The notes under the pieces are model-generated. The model made no database searches. It saw nothing but the letters and a program-made list of their open reading frames with translations, and was not told the DNA's origin. A DNA stretch of 64,000 nt, taken from the IMG/VR virus record IMGVR_UViG_3300037010_001227, positions 62,001 through 126,000 of that record; one strand, given 5' to 3'. The translations under genes were made by a program, and so were the position numbers. Positions 184 to 6,875 of this stretch are shown here, in pieces (within the stretch, counting starts at the first letter, position 1; every line of letters starts with the position of its first letter).

Positions 184-270
184 TGGCGCGTAGTGAGAGA
201 TTTGAACTCCCGGTAGACTTTCATCGACGGATTACAAAACCGTTCCAATTGACCACTATGGGAACTACGC
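184..270 (-). tRNA. tRNA with UGU (Thr) anticodon and long variable arm
   Basis: Acceptor GCGTAGT/ACTACGC, G73, encoded CCA; anticodon arm ACGGT-TTTGTAA-TCCGT; 15-nt V region with GAT-GAAA-GTC hairpin; T-arm GGGAG-TTCAAAT-CTCTC. Confidence 0.85.
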
Positions 271-2146: not shown

Positions 2147-2236
2147 AGGCGGAAAACAAGAGGATCGAACTCTCATGCCCTTTCAGGTATCTTGTTTAGT
2201 AAACAAGTGCAACAAACCAGTATTTGCCTGTTTTCC
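2147..2236 (-). tRNA. tRNA-Ser(ACT), class II
   Basis: GGAAAAC/GTTTTCC acceptor, G73, CTTGT-TTACTAA-ACAAG anticodon arm, long V-arm, TTCGATC loop; ends CCT. Confidence 0.85.
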
Positions 2237-2432: not shown

Positions 2433-3029
2433 TTATAGTAGTTTCAGCCCTTTTATACGAAAAATGTCACCAAAGTTGTTCATCAGAGCTAAAGCAGTTA
2501 CTCGGTTATCTAAATCAGGTTCACTCCATTCTGTATAAAAATCAAACCTACAACTATCATAGCGTTGAAGAATCTGTTTAAGACTCTGAGAACCTTCCGG
2601 TGTTAATAATATAATCGTACCATTAGTCCAAGGCGCTAATGGATGCTCTTTCTGAAATTGAGCAACAGCATGAGCTGACTGAACTGCTTTCTGTGACTCA
2701 GATAAAGTCTCATCACAAATAATATAAAGCTTCTTTGCACCTGGATTGTTAAAATACTCTTTCCAAGTATCAATACGCTCACGTAATTTATCACTCAAAT
2801 CACGTAATCTATGTTCATATGCCTTACTGGCATTTTTTGATATAACTTCAATTGGACCTTTGTGAGTCCTATACTTGCTACGTAATTCTGACATAGCTAT
2901 ATGAAGTGCTCTATACTGAACCGTATTAGTTCCAGCGTAGGTTTTAAGTAACAGTTTAGCCTTTTTCCAAGCTTCTTTTTGTTCAGCAGTGAAATTAGGA
3001 CGAGTTTTAATAGTAGTTTCGATAGCCAT
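2433..3029 (-). CDS. PTH2-like peptidyl-tRNA hydrolase domain protein with N-terminal extension
   Basis: C-terminal QKAVQSAHAVAQF...WSEPDLDNRVTALAL pattern of phage PTH2-like proteins; SD AAGGAG before the ATG at 3029. Confidence 0.7.
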   Translation of the reverse strand: MAIETTIKTRPNFTAEQKEAWKKAKLLLKTYAGTNTVQYRALHIAMSELRSKYRTHKGPIEVISKNASKAYEHRLRDLSDKLRERIDTWKEYFNNPGAKKLYIICDETLSESQKAVQSAHAVAQFQKEHPLAPWTNGTIILLTPEGSQSLKQILQRYDSCRFDFYTEWSEPDLDNRVTALALMNNFGDIFRIKGLKLL

Positions 3030-3036
3030 TTGATGG

Positions 3037-3143
3037 TCTCCTTGAAAAATTGGCACTTTATAAAGGTGTAACTCTTCACAAGATCAAGGCGATCTACTTA
3101 CAACCTAAAGATGATTAAAGCTCATAAACATGATGTTACTCCT
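3037..3143 (-). promoter_or_regulatory. leader peptide MFMSFNHL* (3105-3131) with putative translational attenuator of the PTH2-like gene
   Basis: SD AGGAGT 6 nt before the uORF ATG; AGATC/GATCT hairpin competes with anti-SD TCGCCTTGA pairing to TCAAGGAGA (8 of 9 bp). Confidence 0.5.
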
Positions 3144-3155
3144 AATATATAATTC

Positions 3156-3229
3156 TGGTGTTTCTGACAGGAATTGAACCCGTATAAACTATTTTAGAGA
3201 TAGCTGCTCTACCGTTGAGCTACAGAAAC
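3156..3229 (-). tRNA. amber suppressor tRNA (CTA anticodon)
   Basis: GTTTCTG/CAGAAAC acceptor, A73, CCA; GCTAT-CTCTAAA-ATAGT anticodon arm; canonical D- and T-arms. Confidence 0.9.
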
Positions 3230-4743: not shown

Positions 4744-4830
4744 TGATGCGAGAATTGGGAGTGGAACCCACACATCACAAGGATATCACTTTCTAAGAAT
4801 GAAACGTCGAGCTAGGTCTGCCATTCTCGC
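4744..4830 (-). tRNA. tRNA-Leu(TAG) with aberrant T-loop
   Basis: GCGAGAA/TTCTCGC, A73, TCATT-CTTAGAA-AGTGA, V-arm; T-loop TTCCACT; no CCA. Confidence 0.75.
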
Positions 4831-4832
4831 AT

Positions 4833-4917
4833 GGGTGCTGATTACAGGAATCGAACCTGGTTACTTTCACGCCAGATTTACAGTCTGGTACCAAGTCCAG
4901 TAGAGAGCAGAATCAGC
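4833..4917 (-). tRNA. tRNA-Tyr(GTA)
   Basis: GCTGATT/AATCAGC, A73, CCAGA-CTGTAAA-TCTGG, V-arm, TTCGATT loop; weak D-stem. Confidence 0.85.
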
Positions 4918-5202: not shown

Positions 5203-5280
5203 TGGTGGATCTTGTCGGTAACGATCCGACCTGTATTCTCCTTGCAAAAGAGACAACCACCCCGTGCAGTTCCAAGACCC
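5203..5280 (-). tRNA. tRNA-Ala(TGC)
   Basis: G3.U70 pair, TCTCT-TTTGCAA-GGAGA, A73, CCA; T-loop ATCGTTA. Confidence 0.9.
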
Positions 5281-5284
5281 AAAA

Positions 5285-5880
5285 TTATTTGTGTTTTATG
5301 TATCTACTACTGTCAGTAAGAAAATGTATCTCTTCATGACAGGTAGGCACAAAATTTGAAGATTTTCAATACTATTGTTTGTTCTGTCTTTATCTATACG
5401 ATAAACAATTAACAATTCCGGTAACTTATCATATCCGCAATTATTACAGTTATTTGTATTATTTCTTTTTCTATTTCTCTGTAACTATAATCTCCACTTT
5501 TAAAATCTATTCTAACTAATAAATTTCGTTCAGTTTGTTTAGCTAAATCACAACATTTATGAGAACAAAAATGTAGTCCAGATTTTTTAGAATCAAATAA
5601 TTTACTAATATAATAAGATTTTCCACATAATGAACAAACACAATTATGTGGCTTGTCTTATTTTGTAAACAGCTTATTATATAACAATATGTGCAAGATT
5701 TACAACAAAACTTAGCTCTCACTCTATTAAGTTATTTATTTTCAGCTTCAATATATCTTGCAATATAAACATTTTACAATAGTTTTTGATATATTGGCAG
5801 ATATCCTTTGTATTTATTTACAAAGAAGACAGACCATCCACTAAATAAAAGTTTACAGTCAAATACACAAACTTCTACAA
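5285..5880 (-). pseudogene. decayed HNH endonuclease with N-terminal Cys-rich repeats
   Basis: Fragments CSLCGKSY..FCSHKC, CNNCGYDK..LIVYRIDKDRTNNSIENLQILC(fs)PTCHEEIH, broken by stops and frameshifts. Confidence 0.75.
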
Positions 5881-5907
5881 AAGTCTACCAAGATTAACCT
5901 GGTTAAT

Positions 5908-5982
5908 TGGTCGGAGTAGGAGAGATCGAATCTCCGGCTTCCTGTATCCAAAACAGGCTGTCTACCACTGACTTACACTCCG
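5908..5982 (-). tRNA. tRNA-Pro(TGG)
   Basis: C1-G72, CCTGT-TTTGGAT-ACAGG, A73, CCA. Confidence 0.95.
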
Positions 5983-6043
5983 TATTTTAACATATTATCA
6001 CATATGTTGGGGAAGAACCTAACGCTTCAAATGTGAAGGTTAC

Positions 6044-6119
6044 AGGTTGCCCAAAGTAGGATTGAACTACTAACCTCACGATTATCGGTCGTGCGCTCTA
6101 CCAGTTGAGCTATTAGGCA
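6044..6119 (-). tRNA. tRNA-Ile(GAT) with C33
   Basis: CACGA-CCGATAA-TCGTG; TGCCTAA/TTGGGCA acceptor. Confidence 0.85.
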
Positions 6120-6122
6120 ATA

Positions 6123-6197
6123 TGGTGGGCTAGATTAGTATCGTCTAACCTCTCGGGATTTTCAGTCCACGCGCTAATACATCTCAGCTACTAACCC
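6123..6197 (-). tRNA. tRNA-Phe(GAA) with degenerate T-loop
   Basis: GGGTTAG/CTAGCCC, A73, CCA, CTGAAAA loop; weak anticodon stem; T-loop ACGATA. Confidence 0.75.
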
Positions 6198-6227
6198 ATA
6201 AAATAAACCATTATTTGATTTTCAAAC

Positions 6228-6406
6228 AACAAAAAACCCGCTTTTTTTTGGCGGGTTCTTGTGAAAGGAGCAAAGATGAAGCTTTATGAACAAGAACCCG
6301 CTCTAGTATGAATGGAGAAAATTGCTGGGCTAAATTGGGCATAAAAACTACGACCAACGTTGTCGTTAGTTGCAAGTAGTGATGTCTGTCCAACTTGAAA
6401 GTTCAT
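6228..6406 (-). promoter_or_regulatory. leader-peptide transcription attenuator upstream of tRNA-Phe/Ile/Pro
   Basis: 40-aa uORF 6284-6406; 12-bp antiterminator (6290-6301 with 6251-6262) mutually exclusive with terminator (6251-6257 with 6235-6241 plus U run). Confidence 0.65.
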
Positions 6407-6465
6407 ACAATTAATTCCTATTTGTATACTGGTGGATAGGAAGAAAACTTAAGATATTTATTTTT

Positions 6466-6540
6466 TGGTGCGCCCGGAGGATCTCGAAACCTCAACCCTT
6501 TCGTTAAAAGCGAAATGCTCTTCCTTTGAGCTACGGGCAC
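6466..6540 (-). tRNA. tRNA-Lys(TTT)
   Basis: TTTCG-CTTTTAA-CGAAA, A73, CCA; T53/T61 mismatch at the T-stem closing pair. Confidence 0.85.
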
Positions 6541-6544
6541 AGAA

Positions 6545-6770
6545 TAATGACAGAGATAACCTTGAAGTATTATGTCCAAACTGCCATTCATTAATAGATA
6601 CTTGAAGAGGTAAAACCAAGGAAATTCAAAACAAGGAAAATACCATACCATACCAGATGATACTTTAATTGAGGCACTAAAAGCAACTGAAACAGTAGGA
6701 CAAGTAGGTATTGTAGTAAGATTATCTCCCAAAGGTAATAACTATGTTAGAGCAAAGAGATACATGTAAA
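6545..6770 (+). pseudogene. HNH endonuclease fragments, antisense to the tRNA array
   Basis: DNLEVLCPNCHSLIDT*RGK, then (frameshifted) TLIEALKATETVGQVGIVVRLSPKGNNY. Confidence 0.6.
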
Positions 6771-6781
6771 CGTTACTAATT

Positions 6782-6864
6782 TGGCTGAGGATATTGGAAT
6801 CGAACCAATCAGGTCAAAGACGAAAGCTTAACAGGCTTTTGTACCACCACTGTACTAATCCTCA
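6782..6864 (-). tRNA. tRNA-Asn(GTT) with extended variable arm
   Basis: TGAGGAT/ATCCTCA, G73, CCA; AAAGC-CTGTTAA-GCTTT; 13-nt V region with GTC-TTT-GAC hairpin. Confidence 0.9.
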
Positions 6865-6875
6865 AAACATTAACA

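What the first reader, a model, noticed from the sequence alone, without database searches (positions are those of the whole stretch)
6782..6864. tRNA-Asn(GUU) with an extended variable arm
A 13-nt V region containing a GTC-TTT-GAC mini-hairpin sits in an otherwise canonical Asn tRNA with intact stems and CCA. This is the second non-canonical V-arm in the same array, which suggests selection rather than decay. A V-arm might block host tRNA nucleases or alter charging (inference).
Basis: partly seen in the sequence, partly recalled or inferred. Interest (0 to 1): 0.6.

Follow-up and report, generated by a model that had tools for sequence, protein, structure and literature searches.

The report
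Phage asparagine tRNA with extra arm
A large T4-like phage encodes an intact asparagine tRNA with an extra hairpin arm of the kind textbooks reserve for Leu, Ser and Tyr tRNAs. About one in ten phage contigs that carry this tRNA type have such a version, which I did not find described in the open literature searched.

Summary
Window 6782-6864 (- strand) is an 83-nt tRNA(GUU) with CCA, all four stems intact and a 13-nt variable region, C-GUC-UUU-GAC-CUG.

It carries every known Asn identity element: GUU, G73 and U1-A72. The phage is a 213-kb T4-like phage from microbial-mat and sediment metagenomes.

The gene is under selection. A relative with 81% nucleotide identity in recA has an identical 83/83 copy. 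A more distant relative has, at the syntenic position, a tRNA-Asn with the same arm layout built from a different stem (GGA-GCAA-UCC-CUG). A third relative has a canonical 5-nt loop.

It is not an oddity of this phage. About 10% of IMG/VR contigs with a tRNA(GUU) of this type carry a long-arm version (92 distinct sequences). In 72 of those 92 the arm region folds into a hairpin, mostly capped by GNRA loops. These tRNAs co-occur with long-arm tRNA-Thr(UGU), as in this window. Cultured Aeromonas T4-like phages have them, annotated simply as tRNA-Asn.

The arm layout matches bacterial tRNA-Tyr, not Ser or Leu.

What the arm does is untested. Evasion of host tRNA nucleases is the leading inference.

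The parts
6782..6864 (-). tRNA-Asn(GUU), 83 nt including the encoded CCA (6784-6782). Discriminator G73 at 6785. Pair U1-A72 at 6864 and 6786.
   Evidence: ARAGORN; Rfam tRNA 53.6 bits; 83/83 identical in relative L122
6830..6832 (-). Anticodon GUU, inside the loop CUGUUAA (6834-6828)
6810..6822 (-). 13-nt variable region CGUCUUUGACCUG: 1 unpaired nt (6822), stem GUC (6821-6819), loop UUU (6818-6816), stem GAC (6815-6813), 3 unpaired nt CUG (6812-6810)
   Evidence: Sequence; RNAfold. Same 1+3bp+3+3bp+3 layout and same GUC/GAC stem as E. coli tyrT CGUCAUCGACUUC.
6841..6855 (-). Class-I-type D arm: 4-bp stem GUAC/GUAC and 7-nt loop AGUGGUG. This is not the 3-bp stem with enlarged loop of type II tRNAs.
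6874..6905 (-). Terminator-like hairpin GGGCATC-(9 nt)-GATGCCC followed by TTTTTATTG. It ends 10 nt upstream of the tRNA 5' end and closes the recA-ORF93 unit.
   Evidence: Read from the sequence. The consensus scan missed it because the loop is 9 nt.
6466..6540 (-). tRNA-Lys(UUU), the next gene downstream. The order recA ... tRNA-Asn, tRNA-Lys is also seen in relatives L351 and L352.
184..270 (-). tRNA-Thr(UGU), 87 nt, with its own extra arm (GAU-GAAA-GUC). This is the other long-arm class-I tRNA of the array.
   Evidence: Long-arm Thr(UGU) co-occurs with long-arm Asn(GUU) across phage contigs.
7312..8502 (-). RecA/UvsX-like recombinase gene upstream of the tRNA. Used as the marker to find related phages.
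   Evidence: Pfam PF00154, E = 5.5e-37; homologues

Best explanation
This is a functional phage elongator tRNA-Asn that reads AAU and AAC. It has a class-I body into which a short Tyr-type variable-arm hairpin has been built. It belongs to a widespread architecture of phage and mobile-element tRNA arrays that I did not find described in the literature searched: class-I isoacceptors, above all Asn(GUU) and Thr(UGU), that carry a 3-4-bp extra arm followed by 3-4 unpaired nucleotides.

Shown:
- The gene is intact and conserved under purifying selection.
- It keeps all known Asn identity elements: G34, U35, U36, G73 and U1-A72.
- The arm is a selected structure across the class.
- The phage encodes no AsnRS/AspRS-type enzyme, so a host enzyme must charge it.
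- AAU is among the most-used codons of the phage.

Inferred:
- It is charged with Asn by the host AsnRS, or by non-discriminating AspRS plus GatCAB, and supplies a high-demand codon pair.
- The arm changes the shape of the anticodon-stem/elbow region, so the phage copy is a poor substrate for host tRNA-targeting defence nucleases while still fitting the synthetase, EF-Tu and the ribosome. PARIS AriB, for example, cuts Asn(GUU), Thr(UGU) and Lys(UUU) at position 40/41, three nucleotides before the arm.

My odds: about 0.8 that it is a working, selected tRNA-Asn; about 0.35 that nuclease evasion is the reason for the arm.
For: Conservation. L122, a relative with RecA 87% aa and recA 81% nt identical, has an 83/83 identical tRNA. 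The 200 nt upstream are 83% identical and the 200 nt downstream are unrelated at 53%, against a 52% shuffled baseline. The probability of no change in 83 nt at 81% identity is about 2.5e-8. Wastewater contigs about 10.6% diverged in recA show at most 1 difference across 6777-6864, with indels starting right at 6864.

Compensatory arm. L352 (RecA 61%) has a tRNA-Asn(GUU) at the syntenic place, again followed by tRNA-Lys. Its arm is U-GGA-GCAA-UCC-CUG: a different stem in the same layout, with the same CUG tail.

Prevalence. Of 119 IMG/VR loci hit by a pattern that does not depend on arm length, 13 carry a long-spacing hit. By inference these are L003-L015, and ARAGORN confirms a long-arm tRNA(GUU) in 10 of them.

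Class features. There are 92 distinct long-arm GUU tRNAs; 61 have U1-A72 with G73. The arm region folds into a hairpin of 3 bp or more in 72 of 92, against a mean of 29.9 (maximum 40) in shuffles. Mean folding energy is -2.8 against -0.67 +/- 0.12. GNRA loops cap 45 of 79 hairpins. All four Watson-Crick pair types occur at each stem position. The cloverleaf of 32 members has compensatory changes in 18 of 20 pairs.

Layout. In the same loci the arm is followed by 1 unpaired nt in Ser, 2 in Leu and 3 in Tyr. Long-arm Asn has 3-4 (54 of 72) and long-arm Thr(UGU) 3-4 (9 of 10).

Co-occurrence. Thr(UGU) has a long arm in 11/43 loci that hold a long-arm Asn and in 1/46 control loci (p = 0.0013). Among Thr isoacceptors only UGU has it: 12/89 against 0/45 (p = 0.008).

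Decoding. At RecA columns where this phage has AAY, homologues have N 635, D 140, S 110, G 79; Tyr is not among the eight commonest residues there. AAT is 44.1 and AAC 16.7 per 1000 codons. No PF00152 synthetase is found in the genome.

Literature. Asn identity is the anticodon plus G73, and U1-A72 serves GatCAB (PMC9976931). AriB cleaves Lys(UUU), Thr(UGU) and Asn(GUU) at 40|41, and T5 versions of these tRNAs neutralise PARIS (PMC12409363). Here position 39 is G, not the U of the UAAU motif. The longer variable loop of a phage tRNA-Tyr is required to neutralise Retron-Eco7 (PMC12673091).
Against: There is no RNA-level evidence: no RNA run holds this phage, so expression, processing and charging are not shown.

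The 13-nt arm alone is too short for its identity in L122 to be significant (0.81^13 = 0.065).

Relative L351 (RecA 64%) has a canonical 76-nt tRNA-Asn at the syntenic place, so the arm is dispensable in this phage family.

The host and its defence systems are unknown.

Lys(UUU), the main AriB target, rarely has a long arm (3/82). Many long-arm Asn tRNAs keep U39-C40. Together these weaken the specific PARIS link.

This copy has a UUU triloop, whereas the class mostly has GNRA tetraloops, and G15/G48 cannot form the usual Levitt pair.

Class II synthetases approach tRNA from the variable-loop side (established knowledge from the AspRS-tRNA complexes). Tolerance of the arm by AsnRS is therefore assumed, not shown.
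Confidence: 0.6

Rival explanations
1. Tolerated ornament. This is a working tRNA-Asn kept for codon supply, and its extra arm has no function of its own. Known Asn identity elements (the anticodon and G73) lie outside the variable region, so insertions there would be nearly neutral and would drift in and out of phage tRNA genes.
For: The arm is present in two relatives and absent in a third at the syntenic gene. Arm length and sequence vary widely, from 10 to 21 nt. Long arms turn up at low frequency on many class-I isoacceptors: 19/584 in control loci. AAT and AAC are heavily used.
Against: Neutral insertions would not be expected to form hairpins far above shuffled expectation (72/92 against 29.9). 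Nor would they carry 57% GNRA loops, keep a fixed spacer of 3-4 nt, concentrate in Asn(GUU) at about 10% and Thr(UGU) but not Thr(CGU/GGU), or cluster in the same arrays at p = 3e-5.
Confidence: 0.25
2. Identity switch. The Tyr-like arm makes the tRNA a substrate for TyrRS, SerRS or LeuRS, so AAY codons are partly read as another amino acid. This would parallel the nematode nev-tRNAs and the bacterial allo-tRNAs.
For: The arm has the same layout and the same GUC/GAC stem as E. coli tRNA-Tyr. GUU differs from the Tyr anticodon GUA by one base. V-arm tRNAs with 'wrong' anticodons that are mischarged are documented (PMC3333845; PMC5389517). In 18 of 92 loci a canonical GUU tRNA sits beside the long-arm one, which hints that the two are not redundant.
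Against: G73 is a listed antideterminant for TyrRS and LeuRS, in E. coli tRNA-Ser (PMC9976931). U1-A72, G73 and GUU are exactly the Asn set. The arm has 3 bp and 3 unpaired nt, whereas Ser arms in the same loci have 4-7 bp and 1 unpaired nt. The 7/5 acceptor/T configuration is unlike allo-tRNAs. The D arm is class I. AAY codons lie at Asn-type columns in RecA, and Tyr is not among the eight commonest residues there.
Confidence: 0.05
3. Non-translational role. The RNA would serve as a decoy or sponge for nucleases that cut the tRNA-Tyr variable arm (Septu or Retron-Eco7 PtuAB), or as a handle for a phage protein. One example would be a 'self' mark that spares phage tRNAs from a phage-encoded tRNase.
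For: PtuAB cuts E. coli tRNA-Tyr within the G-U|C of its variable arm (PMC12673091; PMC13096335). This tRNA carries the same CGUC at the same place. GNRA loops, common in the class, are typical contact motifs.
Against: Full conservation of the acceptor end, CCA, T loop, anticodon loop and Asn identity elements argues for use in translation. The phage has its own tRNA-Tyr(GUA) at 4836-4917. The host is unknown and is not E. coli.
Confidence: 0.07
4. Decaying or spurious gene: a pseudo-tRNA that picked up an insertion.
For: The folding energy is not better than that of shuffles (z = -0.37). G15/G48 is not a standard Levitt pair. A terminator-like hairpin lies 10 nt upstream and no convincing promoter was found.
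Against: All stems are Watson-Crick, the T loop is UUCGAUU, and U33, A37 and CCA are present. The Rfam score is 53.6 bits. The tRNA is 83/83 identical in a relative whose recA is 81% identical.
Confidence: 0.02

Closest known systems
Canonical bacterial and phage tRNA-Asn(GUU), for example the T5 tRNA-Asn used against PARIS
   Same: GUU anticodon in a CUGUUAA loop, G73, U1-A72, 7/5 acceptor/T branch and a class-I D arm. It is phage-encoded and sits in a tRNA array next to tRNA-Lys(UUU).
   Different: The canonical form has a 4-5-nt variable loop. This one has 13 nt with a 3-bp hairpin.
Long-arm tRNA-Asn(GUU) genes of cultured T4-like Aeromonas phages (44RR2.8t, 31, Aeh1, PX29), annotated only as 'tRNA-Asn'
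   Same: T4-like phage, GUU anticodon, G73 and an extra arm followed by 3 unpaired nt (GAGGA-AUU-UCCUC-UAU in 44RR2.8t). The genome paper lists Asn GUU without comment on its structure (PMC1524935).
   Different: They have G1-C72 instead of U1-A72, a 5-bp arm and a larger D loop. There is no detectable sequence relationship beyond tRNA generalities.
Bacterial type II tRNA-Tyr (E. coli tyrT)
   Same: A 13-nt variable region with the same layout and the same stem: CGUC-AUC-GAC-UUC against CGUC-UUU-GAC-CUG, 9 of 13 nt identical. The anticodon differs by one base (GUA against GUU).
   Different: Tyr has A73, G1-C72 and a 3-bp D stem with an 11-nt loop. This tRNA has G73, U1-A72 and a 4-bp D stem with a 7-nt loop.
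Nematode nev-tRNAs and bacterial allo-tRNAs (V-arm tRNAs with non-Leu/Ser anticodons)
   Same: A long variable arm on a tRNA whose anticodon is not Leu, Ser or Tyr.
   Different: Those derive from Leu or Ser tRNAs, keep Leu or Ser identity elements and are mischarged. Allo-tRNAs have 8/4 or 9/3 branches. This tRNA keeps the identity set of its own anticodon and has a 7/5 branch.
Phage anti-defence tRNAs (T5 Lys/Thr/Asn against PARIS AriB; SP15 or T5 tRNA-Tyr against Retron-Eco7)
   Same: A phage copy of an isoacceptor known to be a nuclease target, and it differs from the usual form near the cleavage site. For tRNA-Tyr the enlarged variable loop is what confers evasion.
   Different: Those cases were shown by experiment in E. 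coli and involve point changes (Lys, Thr, Asn) or a longer arm on an already type II tRNA. Here a class-I tRNA gains an arm, and nothing has been tested.

Membership tests
tRNA (Rfam RF00005) | Cloverleaf with conserved T loop and D loop, scoring above the gathering threshold | tested here: met
   53.6 bits against 29, E = 1.4e-9, model positions 1-71; ARAGORN call
tRNA-Asn (asparagine identity) | Anticodon G34 U35 U36 | tested here: met
   Loop CUGUUAA. Identity rule from PMC9976931.
tRNA-Asn (asparagine identity) | Discriminator G73 | tested here: met
   G at window 6785
tRNA-Asn (asparagine identity) | U1-A72, the determinant for GatCAB amidation in the indirect pathway | tested here: met
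   U at 6864 paired with A at 6786. Rule from PMC9976931.
tRNA-Asn (asparagine identity) | Aminoacylated with Asn, or Asp then amidated to Asn, in vivo | not testable with these tools
   No RNA runs are available. Indirect support only: AAY codons sit at Asn-type columns in RecA.
Type II (class II) tRNAs: Leu, Ser, bacterial Tyr, Sec | Variable region longer than 10 nt that forms a stem-loop | tested here: met
   13 nt, with a GUC/GAC stem
Type II (class II) tRNAs: Leu, Ser, bacterial Tyr, Sec | Anticodon and identity set of Leu, Ser, Tyr or Sec | tested here: not met
   GUU, G73 and U1-A72
Type II (class II) tRNAs: Leu, Ser, bacterial Tyr, Sec | 3-bp D stem with an enlarged D loop | tested here: not met
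   4-bp stem and 7-nt loop. Compare tyrT.
Mischarged V-arm tRNAs (nev-tRNA, allo-tRNA) | Leu or Ser identity elements (A73, or a long Ser-type arm) with an unrelated anticodon; 8/4 or 9/3 branch for allo-tRNA | tested here: not met
   G73, a 3-bp arm with 3 unpaired nt (Ser arms: 4-7 bp with 1 unpaired nt), and a 7/5 branch
Phage anti-defence tRNAs | Phage-encoded copy of an isoacceptor that a defence nuclease targets | tested here: met
   Asn(GUU) is an AriB target in E. coli (PMC12409363). The array also holds Thr(UGU) and two Lys(UUU).
Phage anti-defence tRNAs | A difference from the host tRNA at the recognition or cleavage site | tested here: inconclusive
   G39 replaces the U of the UAAU motif, and the arm starts 3 nt after the 40|41 site. 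The host tRNA and the host nucleases are unknown.
Phage anti-defence tRNAs | Resists cleavage and rescues infection | not testable with these tools
   Needs cleavage and plaque assays

The most novel reading that the evidence does not exclude
Phages and tRNA-array elements have repeatedly converted class-I tRNAs (Asn(GUU) most often, then Thr(UGU), Ile(UAU), His, Lys and Phe) into type-II-like tRNAs. They did so by adding a short hairpin arm in a Tyr-like orientation while keeping each tRNA's own identity set. The result would be a general, so far unrecognised class of 'armoured' tRNAs that host defence nucleases cannot cut, and in some loci they sit beside canonical copies.
Probability: 0.3. 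Interest if true: 0.8.

Novelty: new variant of a known kind. Interest (0 to 1): 0.62.

Why it matters
Textbook tRNA biology allows long variable arms only on Leu, Ser, bacterial Tyr and Sec tRNAs. The known exceptions (nev-tRNAs, allo-tRNAs) are mischarged oddities.

Here a tRNA that keeps the full Asn identity set carries such an arm, and the same design is common in phage tRNA arrays. That raises concrete, testable questions:
- How do AsnRS or the transamidosome, EF-Tu and the ribosome accommodate the arm?
- Is arm gain a general route by which phages escape tRNA-cutting immunity such as PARIS, Septu or retrons?

It also matters for annotation, because these genes are currently labelled plain 'tRNA-Asn'. 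It may interest people who design orthogonal tRNAs. Cultured Aeromonas phages (44RR2.8t, Aeh1) offer an immediate experimental system.

Tried and rejected
1. Closest relatives by DNA. blastn of the tRNA and of 5800-7400 against 50,697 GenBank phages found only generic tRNA-Ile, T-arm and acceptor matches. An rV5-like hit turned out to be an ordinary tRNA-Ser.

2. The search for related loci with RecA in IMG/VR found nothing. An exact-pattern scan found only L002, a near-identical fragment of the same phage.

3. Origin of the tRNA. Global alignment of the arm-less body against about 2,000 phage tRNAs gave no nearest isoacceptor: the best identities were 0.70-0.74 across Gln, Val, Met, Ile, Asn and Tyr. 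Descent from a tRNA-Tyr can therefore be neither shown nor excluded.

4. Cellular genomes. Of 120 pattern hits in 185,579 species genomes, only 14 were real long-arm tRNA(GUU). Ten of those lie in dense tRNA arrays; the rest of the hits are chance matches.

5. Alternative genetic code. Reading TAG as sense raises crude ORF coverage only from 0.817 to 0.859, so no recoding was assumed.

6. RNAalifold on a MAFFT alignment did not recover the arm, because arms of different length are misaligned. I used per-sequence folding with shuffled controls instead.

7. Expression. No RNA sequencing run holds this phage. Only contigs could be laid.

8. Relatives L123 and L353 have no tRNA near recA. The P0004 contig had no DNA available.

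9. Literature. Ten full-text searches found no description of long-arm tRNA-Asn in phages. The library lacks most subscription journals, so this is not proof of absence.

10. A specific PARIS triad: Lys(UUU) rarely has a long arm (3/82), so the link to AriB is kept only as an analogy.

Full report
WHAT IS THERE

The window is bases 62001-126000 of a 213,189-bp virus record, estimated 95% complete, 34% G+C. Around the finding it encodes RecA/UvsX-like, gp32-like, 5'-3' exonuclease and primase-like proteins. A relative found through RecA (L123) carries a T4-type portal, a prohead protease and gp23 a few kb downstream of recA, so this is a large T4-like phage. DNA runs that hold it come from microbial-mat, sediment and wastewater metagenomes.

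On the - strand between 184 and 6864 lies an array of tRNA genes. ARAGORN finds ten. Rfam adds a tRNA-Tyr(GUA), a tRNA-Leu(UAG) and a Phe(GAA)-like tRNA.

The tRNA in question is the first gene of the array. It starts 10 nt after a terminator-like hairpin that closes the recA unit.

CHECK OF THE OBSERVATION

ARAGORN and Rfam (53.6 bits, E = 1.4e-9) agree on an 83-nt tRNA(GUU) at 6782-6864 (-). All four stems are Watson-Crick. The T loop is UUCGAUU and the anticodon loop is CUGUUAA. CCA is encoded.

The variable region is CGUCUUUGACCUG, 13 nt. RNAfold puts GUC/GAC with a UUU loop into the minimum-energy cloverleaf. The D arm is of the class-I kind: a 4-bp stem and a 7-nt loop.

The 'other' long-arm tRNA is confirmed too: Thr(UGU) at 184-270, with arm GAU-GAAA-GUC.

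IDENTITY

According to the tRNA identity review PMC9976931, bacterial Asn identity rests on the three anticodon bases and G73. U1-A72 directs GatCAB amidation in the indirect pathway. G73 is listed there as an antideterminant for TyrRS and LeuRS, in E. coli tRNA-Ser. This tRNA has GUU, G73 and U1-A72.

The genome has no class IIb synthetase gene (PF00152), so a host enzyme must charge the tRNA. It does have a CCA-adding-enzyme family gene.

AAT (44.1 per thousand) and AAC (16.7 per thousand) are heavily used. At RecA columns where this phage has AAY, 68 homologues show N 635, D 140, S 110 and G 79. That is an ordinary Asn substitution pattern, and Tyr is not among the eight commonest residues there. 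I see no sign of recoding.

SELECTION ON THIS GENE

L122 is a relative whose RecA is 87% identical in protein and whose recA is 81% identical in DNA. Its tRNA copy is identical at 83 of 83 positions. The 200 nt upstream are 83% identical, and the 200 nt downstream are unrelated. The chance of no change in 83 nt at that divergence is about 2.5e-8.

Contigs from two wastewater runs that are about 10.6% diverged in recA show at most one difference over 6777-6864. Their indels begin exactly at the tRNA 5' end. These runs may be the same lineage as L122, so I count this as one line of support, not two.

The arm alone (13 nt) is too short for this test: p = 0.065.

More telling is L352 (RecA 61%). 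At the same place, downstream of recA and directly before tRNA-Lys(UUU), it has an 84-nt tRNA-Asn(GUU). Its arm is U-GGA-GCAA-UCC-CUG: a wholly different stem in the same layout, with the same CUG tail.

L351 (RecA 64%) has a canonical 76-nt tRNA-Asn there. So within this phage family the arm is kept in some lines and absent in others.

L122 also has a long-arm tRNA-His(GUG), and L352 a long-arm tRNA-Lys(UUU).

HOW COMMON IT IS

ARAGORN found 92 distinct tRNA(GUU) of 79-94 nt in them.

The same pattern with the spacing left free gave 119 loci. Of these, 106 had only canonical spacing and 13 had been found before by the long-spacing pattern. From the scan order I infer these are L003-L015, and ARAGORN confirms a long-arm tRNA(GUU) in 10 of them. 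So about one phage contig in ten that carries such a tRNA has the long-arm form.

In 185,579 cellular species genomes the long pattern mostly gave chance hits. Of the 14 real ones, 10 lie in stretches with 10-36 tRNA genes per 8 kb, that is, in tRNA arrays.

Cultured T4-like Aeromonas phages (44RR2.8t, 31, Aeh1, PX29 and others) carry such genes. They are annotated plainly as tRNA-Asn. The 2006 genome paper lists 'Asn GUU' without remark on structure (PMC1524935).

THE ARM IS A STRUCTURE, WITH A DEFINED ORIENTATION

- 72 of the 92 arm regions fold into a hairpin of 3 bp or more. Shuffles give a mean of 29.9 and a maximum of 40.
- Mean energy is -2.8 against -0.67 +/- 0.12 kcal/mol.
- 45 of 79 loops are GNRA, and 30 of those are GAAA.
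- All four Watson-Crick pair types occur at each stem position.

Unpaired nucleotides after the arm, for tRNAs in the same loci:

| tRNA class | Stem length | Unpaired nt after the arm |
|---|---|---|
| Ser | 4-7 bp | 1 |
| Leu | 3-4 bp | 2 |
| Tyr | 3 bp | 3 |
| Long-arm Asn(GUU) | 3-4 bp | 3-4 (54 of 72) |
| Long-arm Thr(UGU) | mostly 3 bp | 3-4 (9 of 10) |

That spacer is known to set arm orientation and to separate Ser, Leu and Tyr recognition. I state this from established knowledge of type II tRNA identity, not from a test here.

The copy in this window has 1 + 3 bp + 3 + 3 bp + 3 nt. That is exactly the E. coli tyrT layout, with the same GUC/GAC stem. It differs from most of the class in having a UUU triloop.

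Of the 92 sequences, 61 have U1-A72 with G73, 23 have G1-C72 with G73, and 7 have G1-C72 with U73. The cloverleaf of 32 U1-A72 members shows compensatory changes in 18 of 20 pairs.

COMPANY IT KEEPS

Loci with a long-arm Asn have larger arrays: a median of 11 tRNAs against 5. More long arms sit on other class-I tRNAs there: 83/985 against 19/584, p = 3e-5.

Thr(UGU) stands out: 11/43 against 1/46, p = 0.0013. Among Thr isoacceptors only UGU has a long arm: 12/89 against 0/45, p = 0.008.

In 18 of 92 loci a canonical GUU tRNA sits beside the long-arm one.

WHAT THE ARM IS FOR

Nothing here tests this. Three published facts make nuclease evasion the leading idea.

1. PARIS AriB cleaves E. coli Lys(UUU), Thr(UGU) and Asn(GUU) between positions 40 and 41. 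It recognises U36-A-A-U39, and the T5 versions of these three tRNAs neutralise PARIS (PMC12409363). In this tRNA position 39 is G, and the arm starts three nucleotides after the cut site.
2. Retron-Eco7 and Septu (PtuAB) cut the variable arm of tRNA-Tyr. The longer arm of a phage tRNA-Tyr is needed to neutralise the retron (PMC12673091, PMC13096335).
3. The bias towards one Thr isoacceptor fits a pressure that reads the anticodon region better than one acting through the synthetase.

Against the idea: Lys(UUU) seldom has the arm (3/82). Many long-arm Asn tRNAs keep U39-C40. The arm is dispensable in L351. The host is unknown.

A neutral, tolerated insertion is the main rival. The hairpin excess, the GNRA loops, the fixed spacer and the isoacceptor bias argue against pure drift. 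Mischarging, a decoy role and gene decay are less likely, for the reasons given under rivals.

COMPARISON AND NOVELTY

The tRNA works like, and by its identity elements is, a tRNA-Asn. It has one defining feature of type II tRNAs (the arm) but not the others (anticodon set, D arm). It therefore should not be filed as type II, nor as a nev-tRNA or allo-tRNA.

Ten full-text searches found no description of long-arm tRNA-Asn in phages. The library lacks most subscription journals, so I rate it as a new variant of a known kind rather than something wholly new. Such genes have sat in GenBank, uncommented, since the Aeromonas phage genomes were deposited.

LIMITS

- There is no expression or charging evidence.
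- Variable-region lengths come from ARAGORN folds.
- Some 'long-arm' calls on other isoacceptors may be mis-folds.

Noticed in passing
window 3156-3229 (-): A high-scoring tRNA with anticodon CUA (amber suppressor type; Rfam 68.4 bits; ARAGORN labels it 'Pyl'). Crude ORF coverage of the genome rises only from 0.817 to 0.859 if TAG is read as sense, so genome-wide recoding is not evident. The bins at genome 110-130 kb gain most.
   Followed up: partly
window 184-270 (-): tRNA-Thr(UGU), 87 nt, with an extra arm GAU-GAAA-GUC and 4 unpaired nt after it. It has one U-U mismatch in the anticodon stem and a weak D stem. Long-arm Thr(UGU) co-occurs with long-arm Asn(GUU) across phage contigs (11/43 against 1/46).
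   Followed up: partly
window 4747-4830, 4836-4917 and 6126-6197 (-): Three tRNA-like genes that ARAGORN missed: Leu(UAG) at 26.0 bits, Tyr(GUA) at 26.1 bits and a Phe(GAA)-like gene with a degenerate T arm at 31.3 bits. The first two fall just under the Rfam gathering score of 29.
   Followed up: partly
window 2148-2236 (-) and 5203-5280 (-): ARAGORN-only calls with odd features: a 'Ser' tRNA with anticodon ACU (A34) and a short CCU-GAAA-GGG arm, and an Ala(UGC) with irregular junctions. Neither gave an Rfam hit at E <= 1.
   Followed up: no
L122:12361-12446 and L352:13504-13587: Related phages carry a long-arm tRNA-His(GUG) (86 nt, arm GAGAA-UUU-UCUC) and a long-arm tRNA-Lys(UUU) (84 nt, arm CGCGA-GAAA-UCGC). 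Arm gain therefore affects several isoacceptors in this phage family.
   Followed up: no
13 IMG/VR loci, e.g. L108, L106, L069, L210, L020: tRNA(UAU) genes of 88-96 nt with a 19-24-nt variable arm. Most share a loop motif resembling CAGAU(U/A)A. They make up 13 of 36 tRNA(UAU) in the loci examined. This looks like a second, distinct long-arm class.
   Followed up: no
L356 (Aeromonas phage 44RR2.8t, NC_005135.1) 2835-2919 and 3001-3086: This cultured phage has an 86-nt long-arm tRNA-Asn(GUU) and an 85-nt long-arm tRNA-Phe(GAA) side by side. Both are annotated as ordinary tRNAs.
   Followed up: partly
G000:C1:198002-198307 (outside the window): A 431-aa ORF of the CCA-adding enzyme/poly(A) polymerase family (PF01743, 73 bits). 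No RNA ligase (PF09414) and no class IIb synthetase (PF00152) were found in the genome.
   Followed up: partly
L122:11765-12304 (-): A 179-aa ORF sits between the tRNA-Asn and tRNA-His genes of the relative, in DNA that is unrelated to this window at the same place. It could be a mobile insertion, but this was not examined.
   Followed up: no
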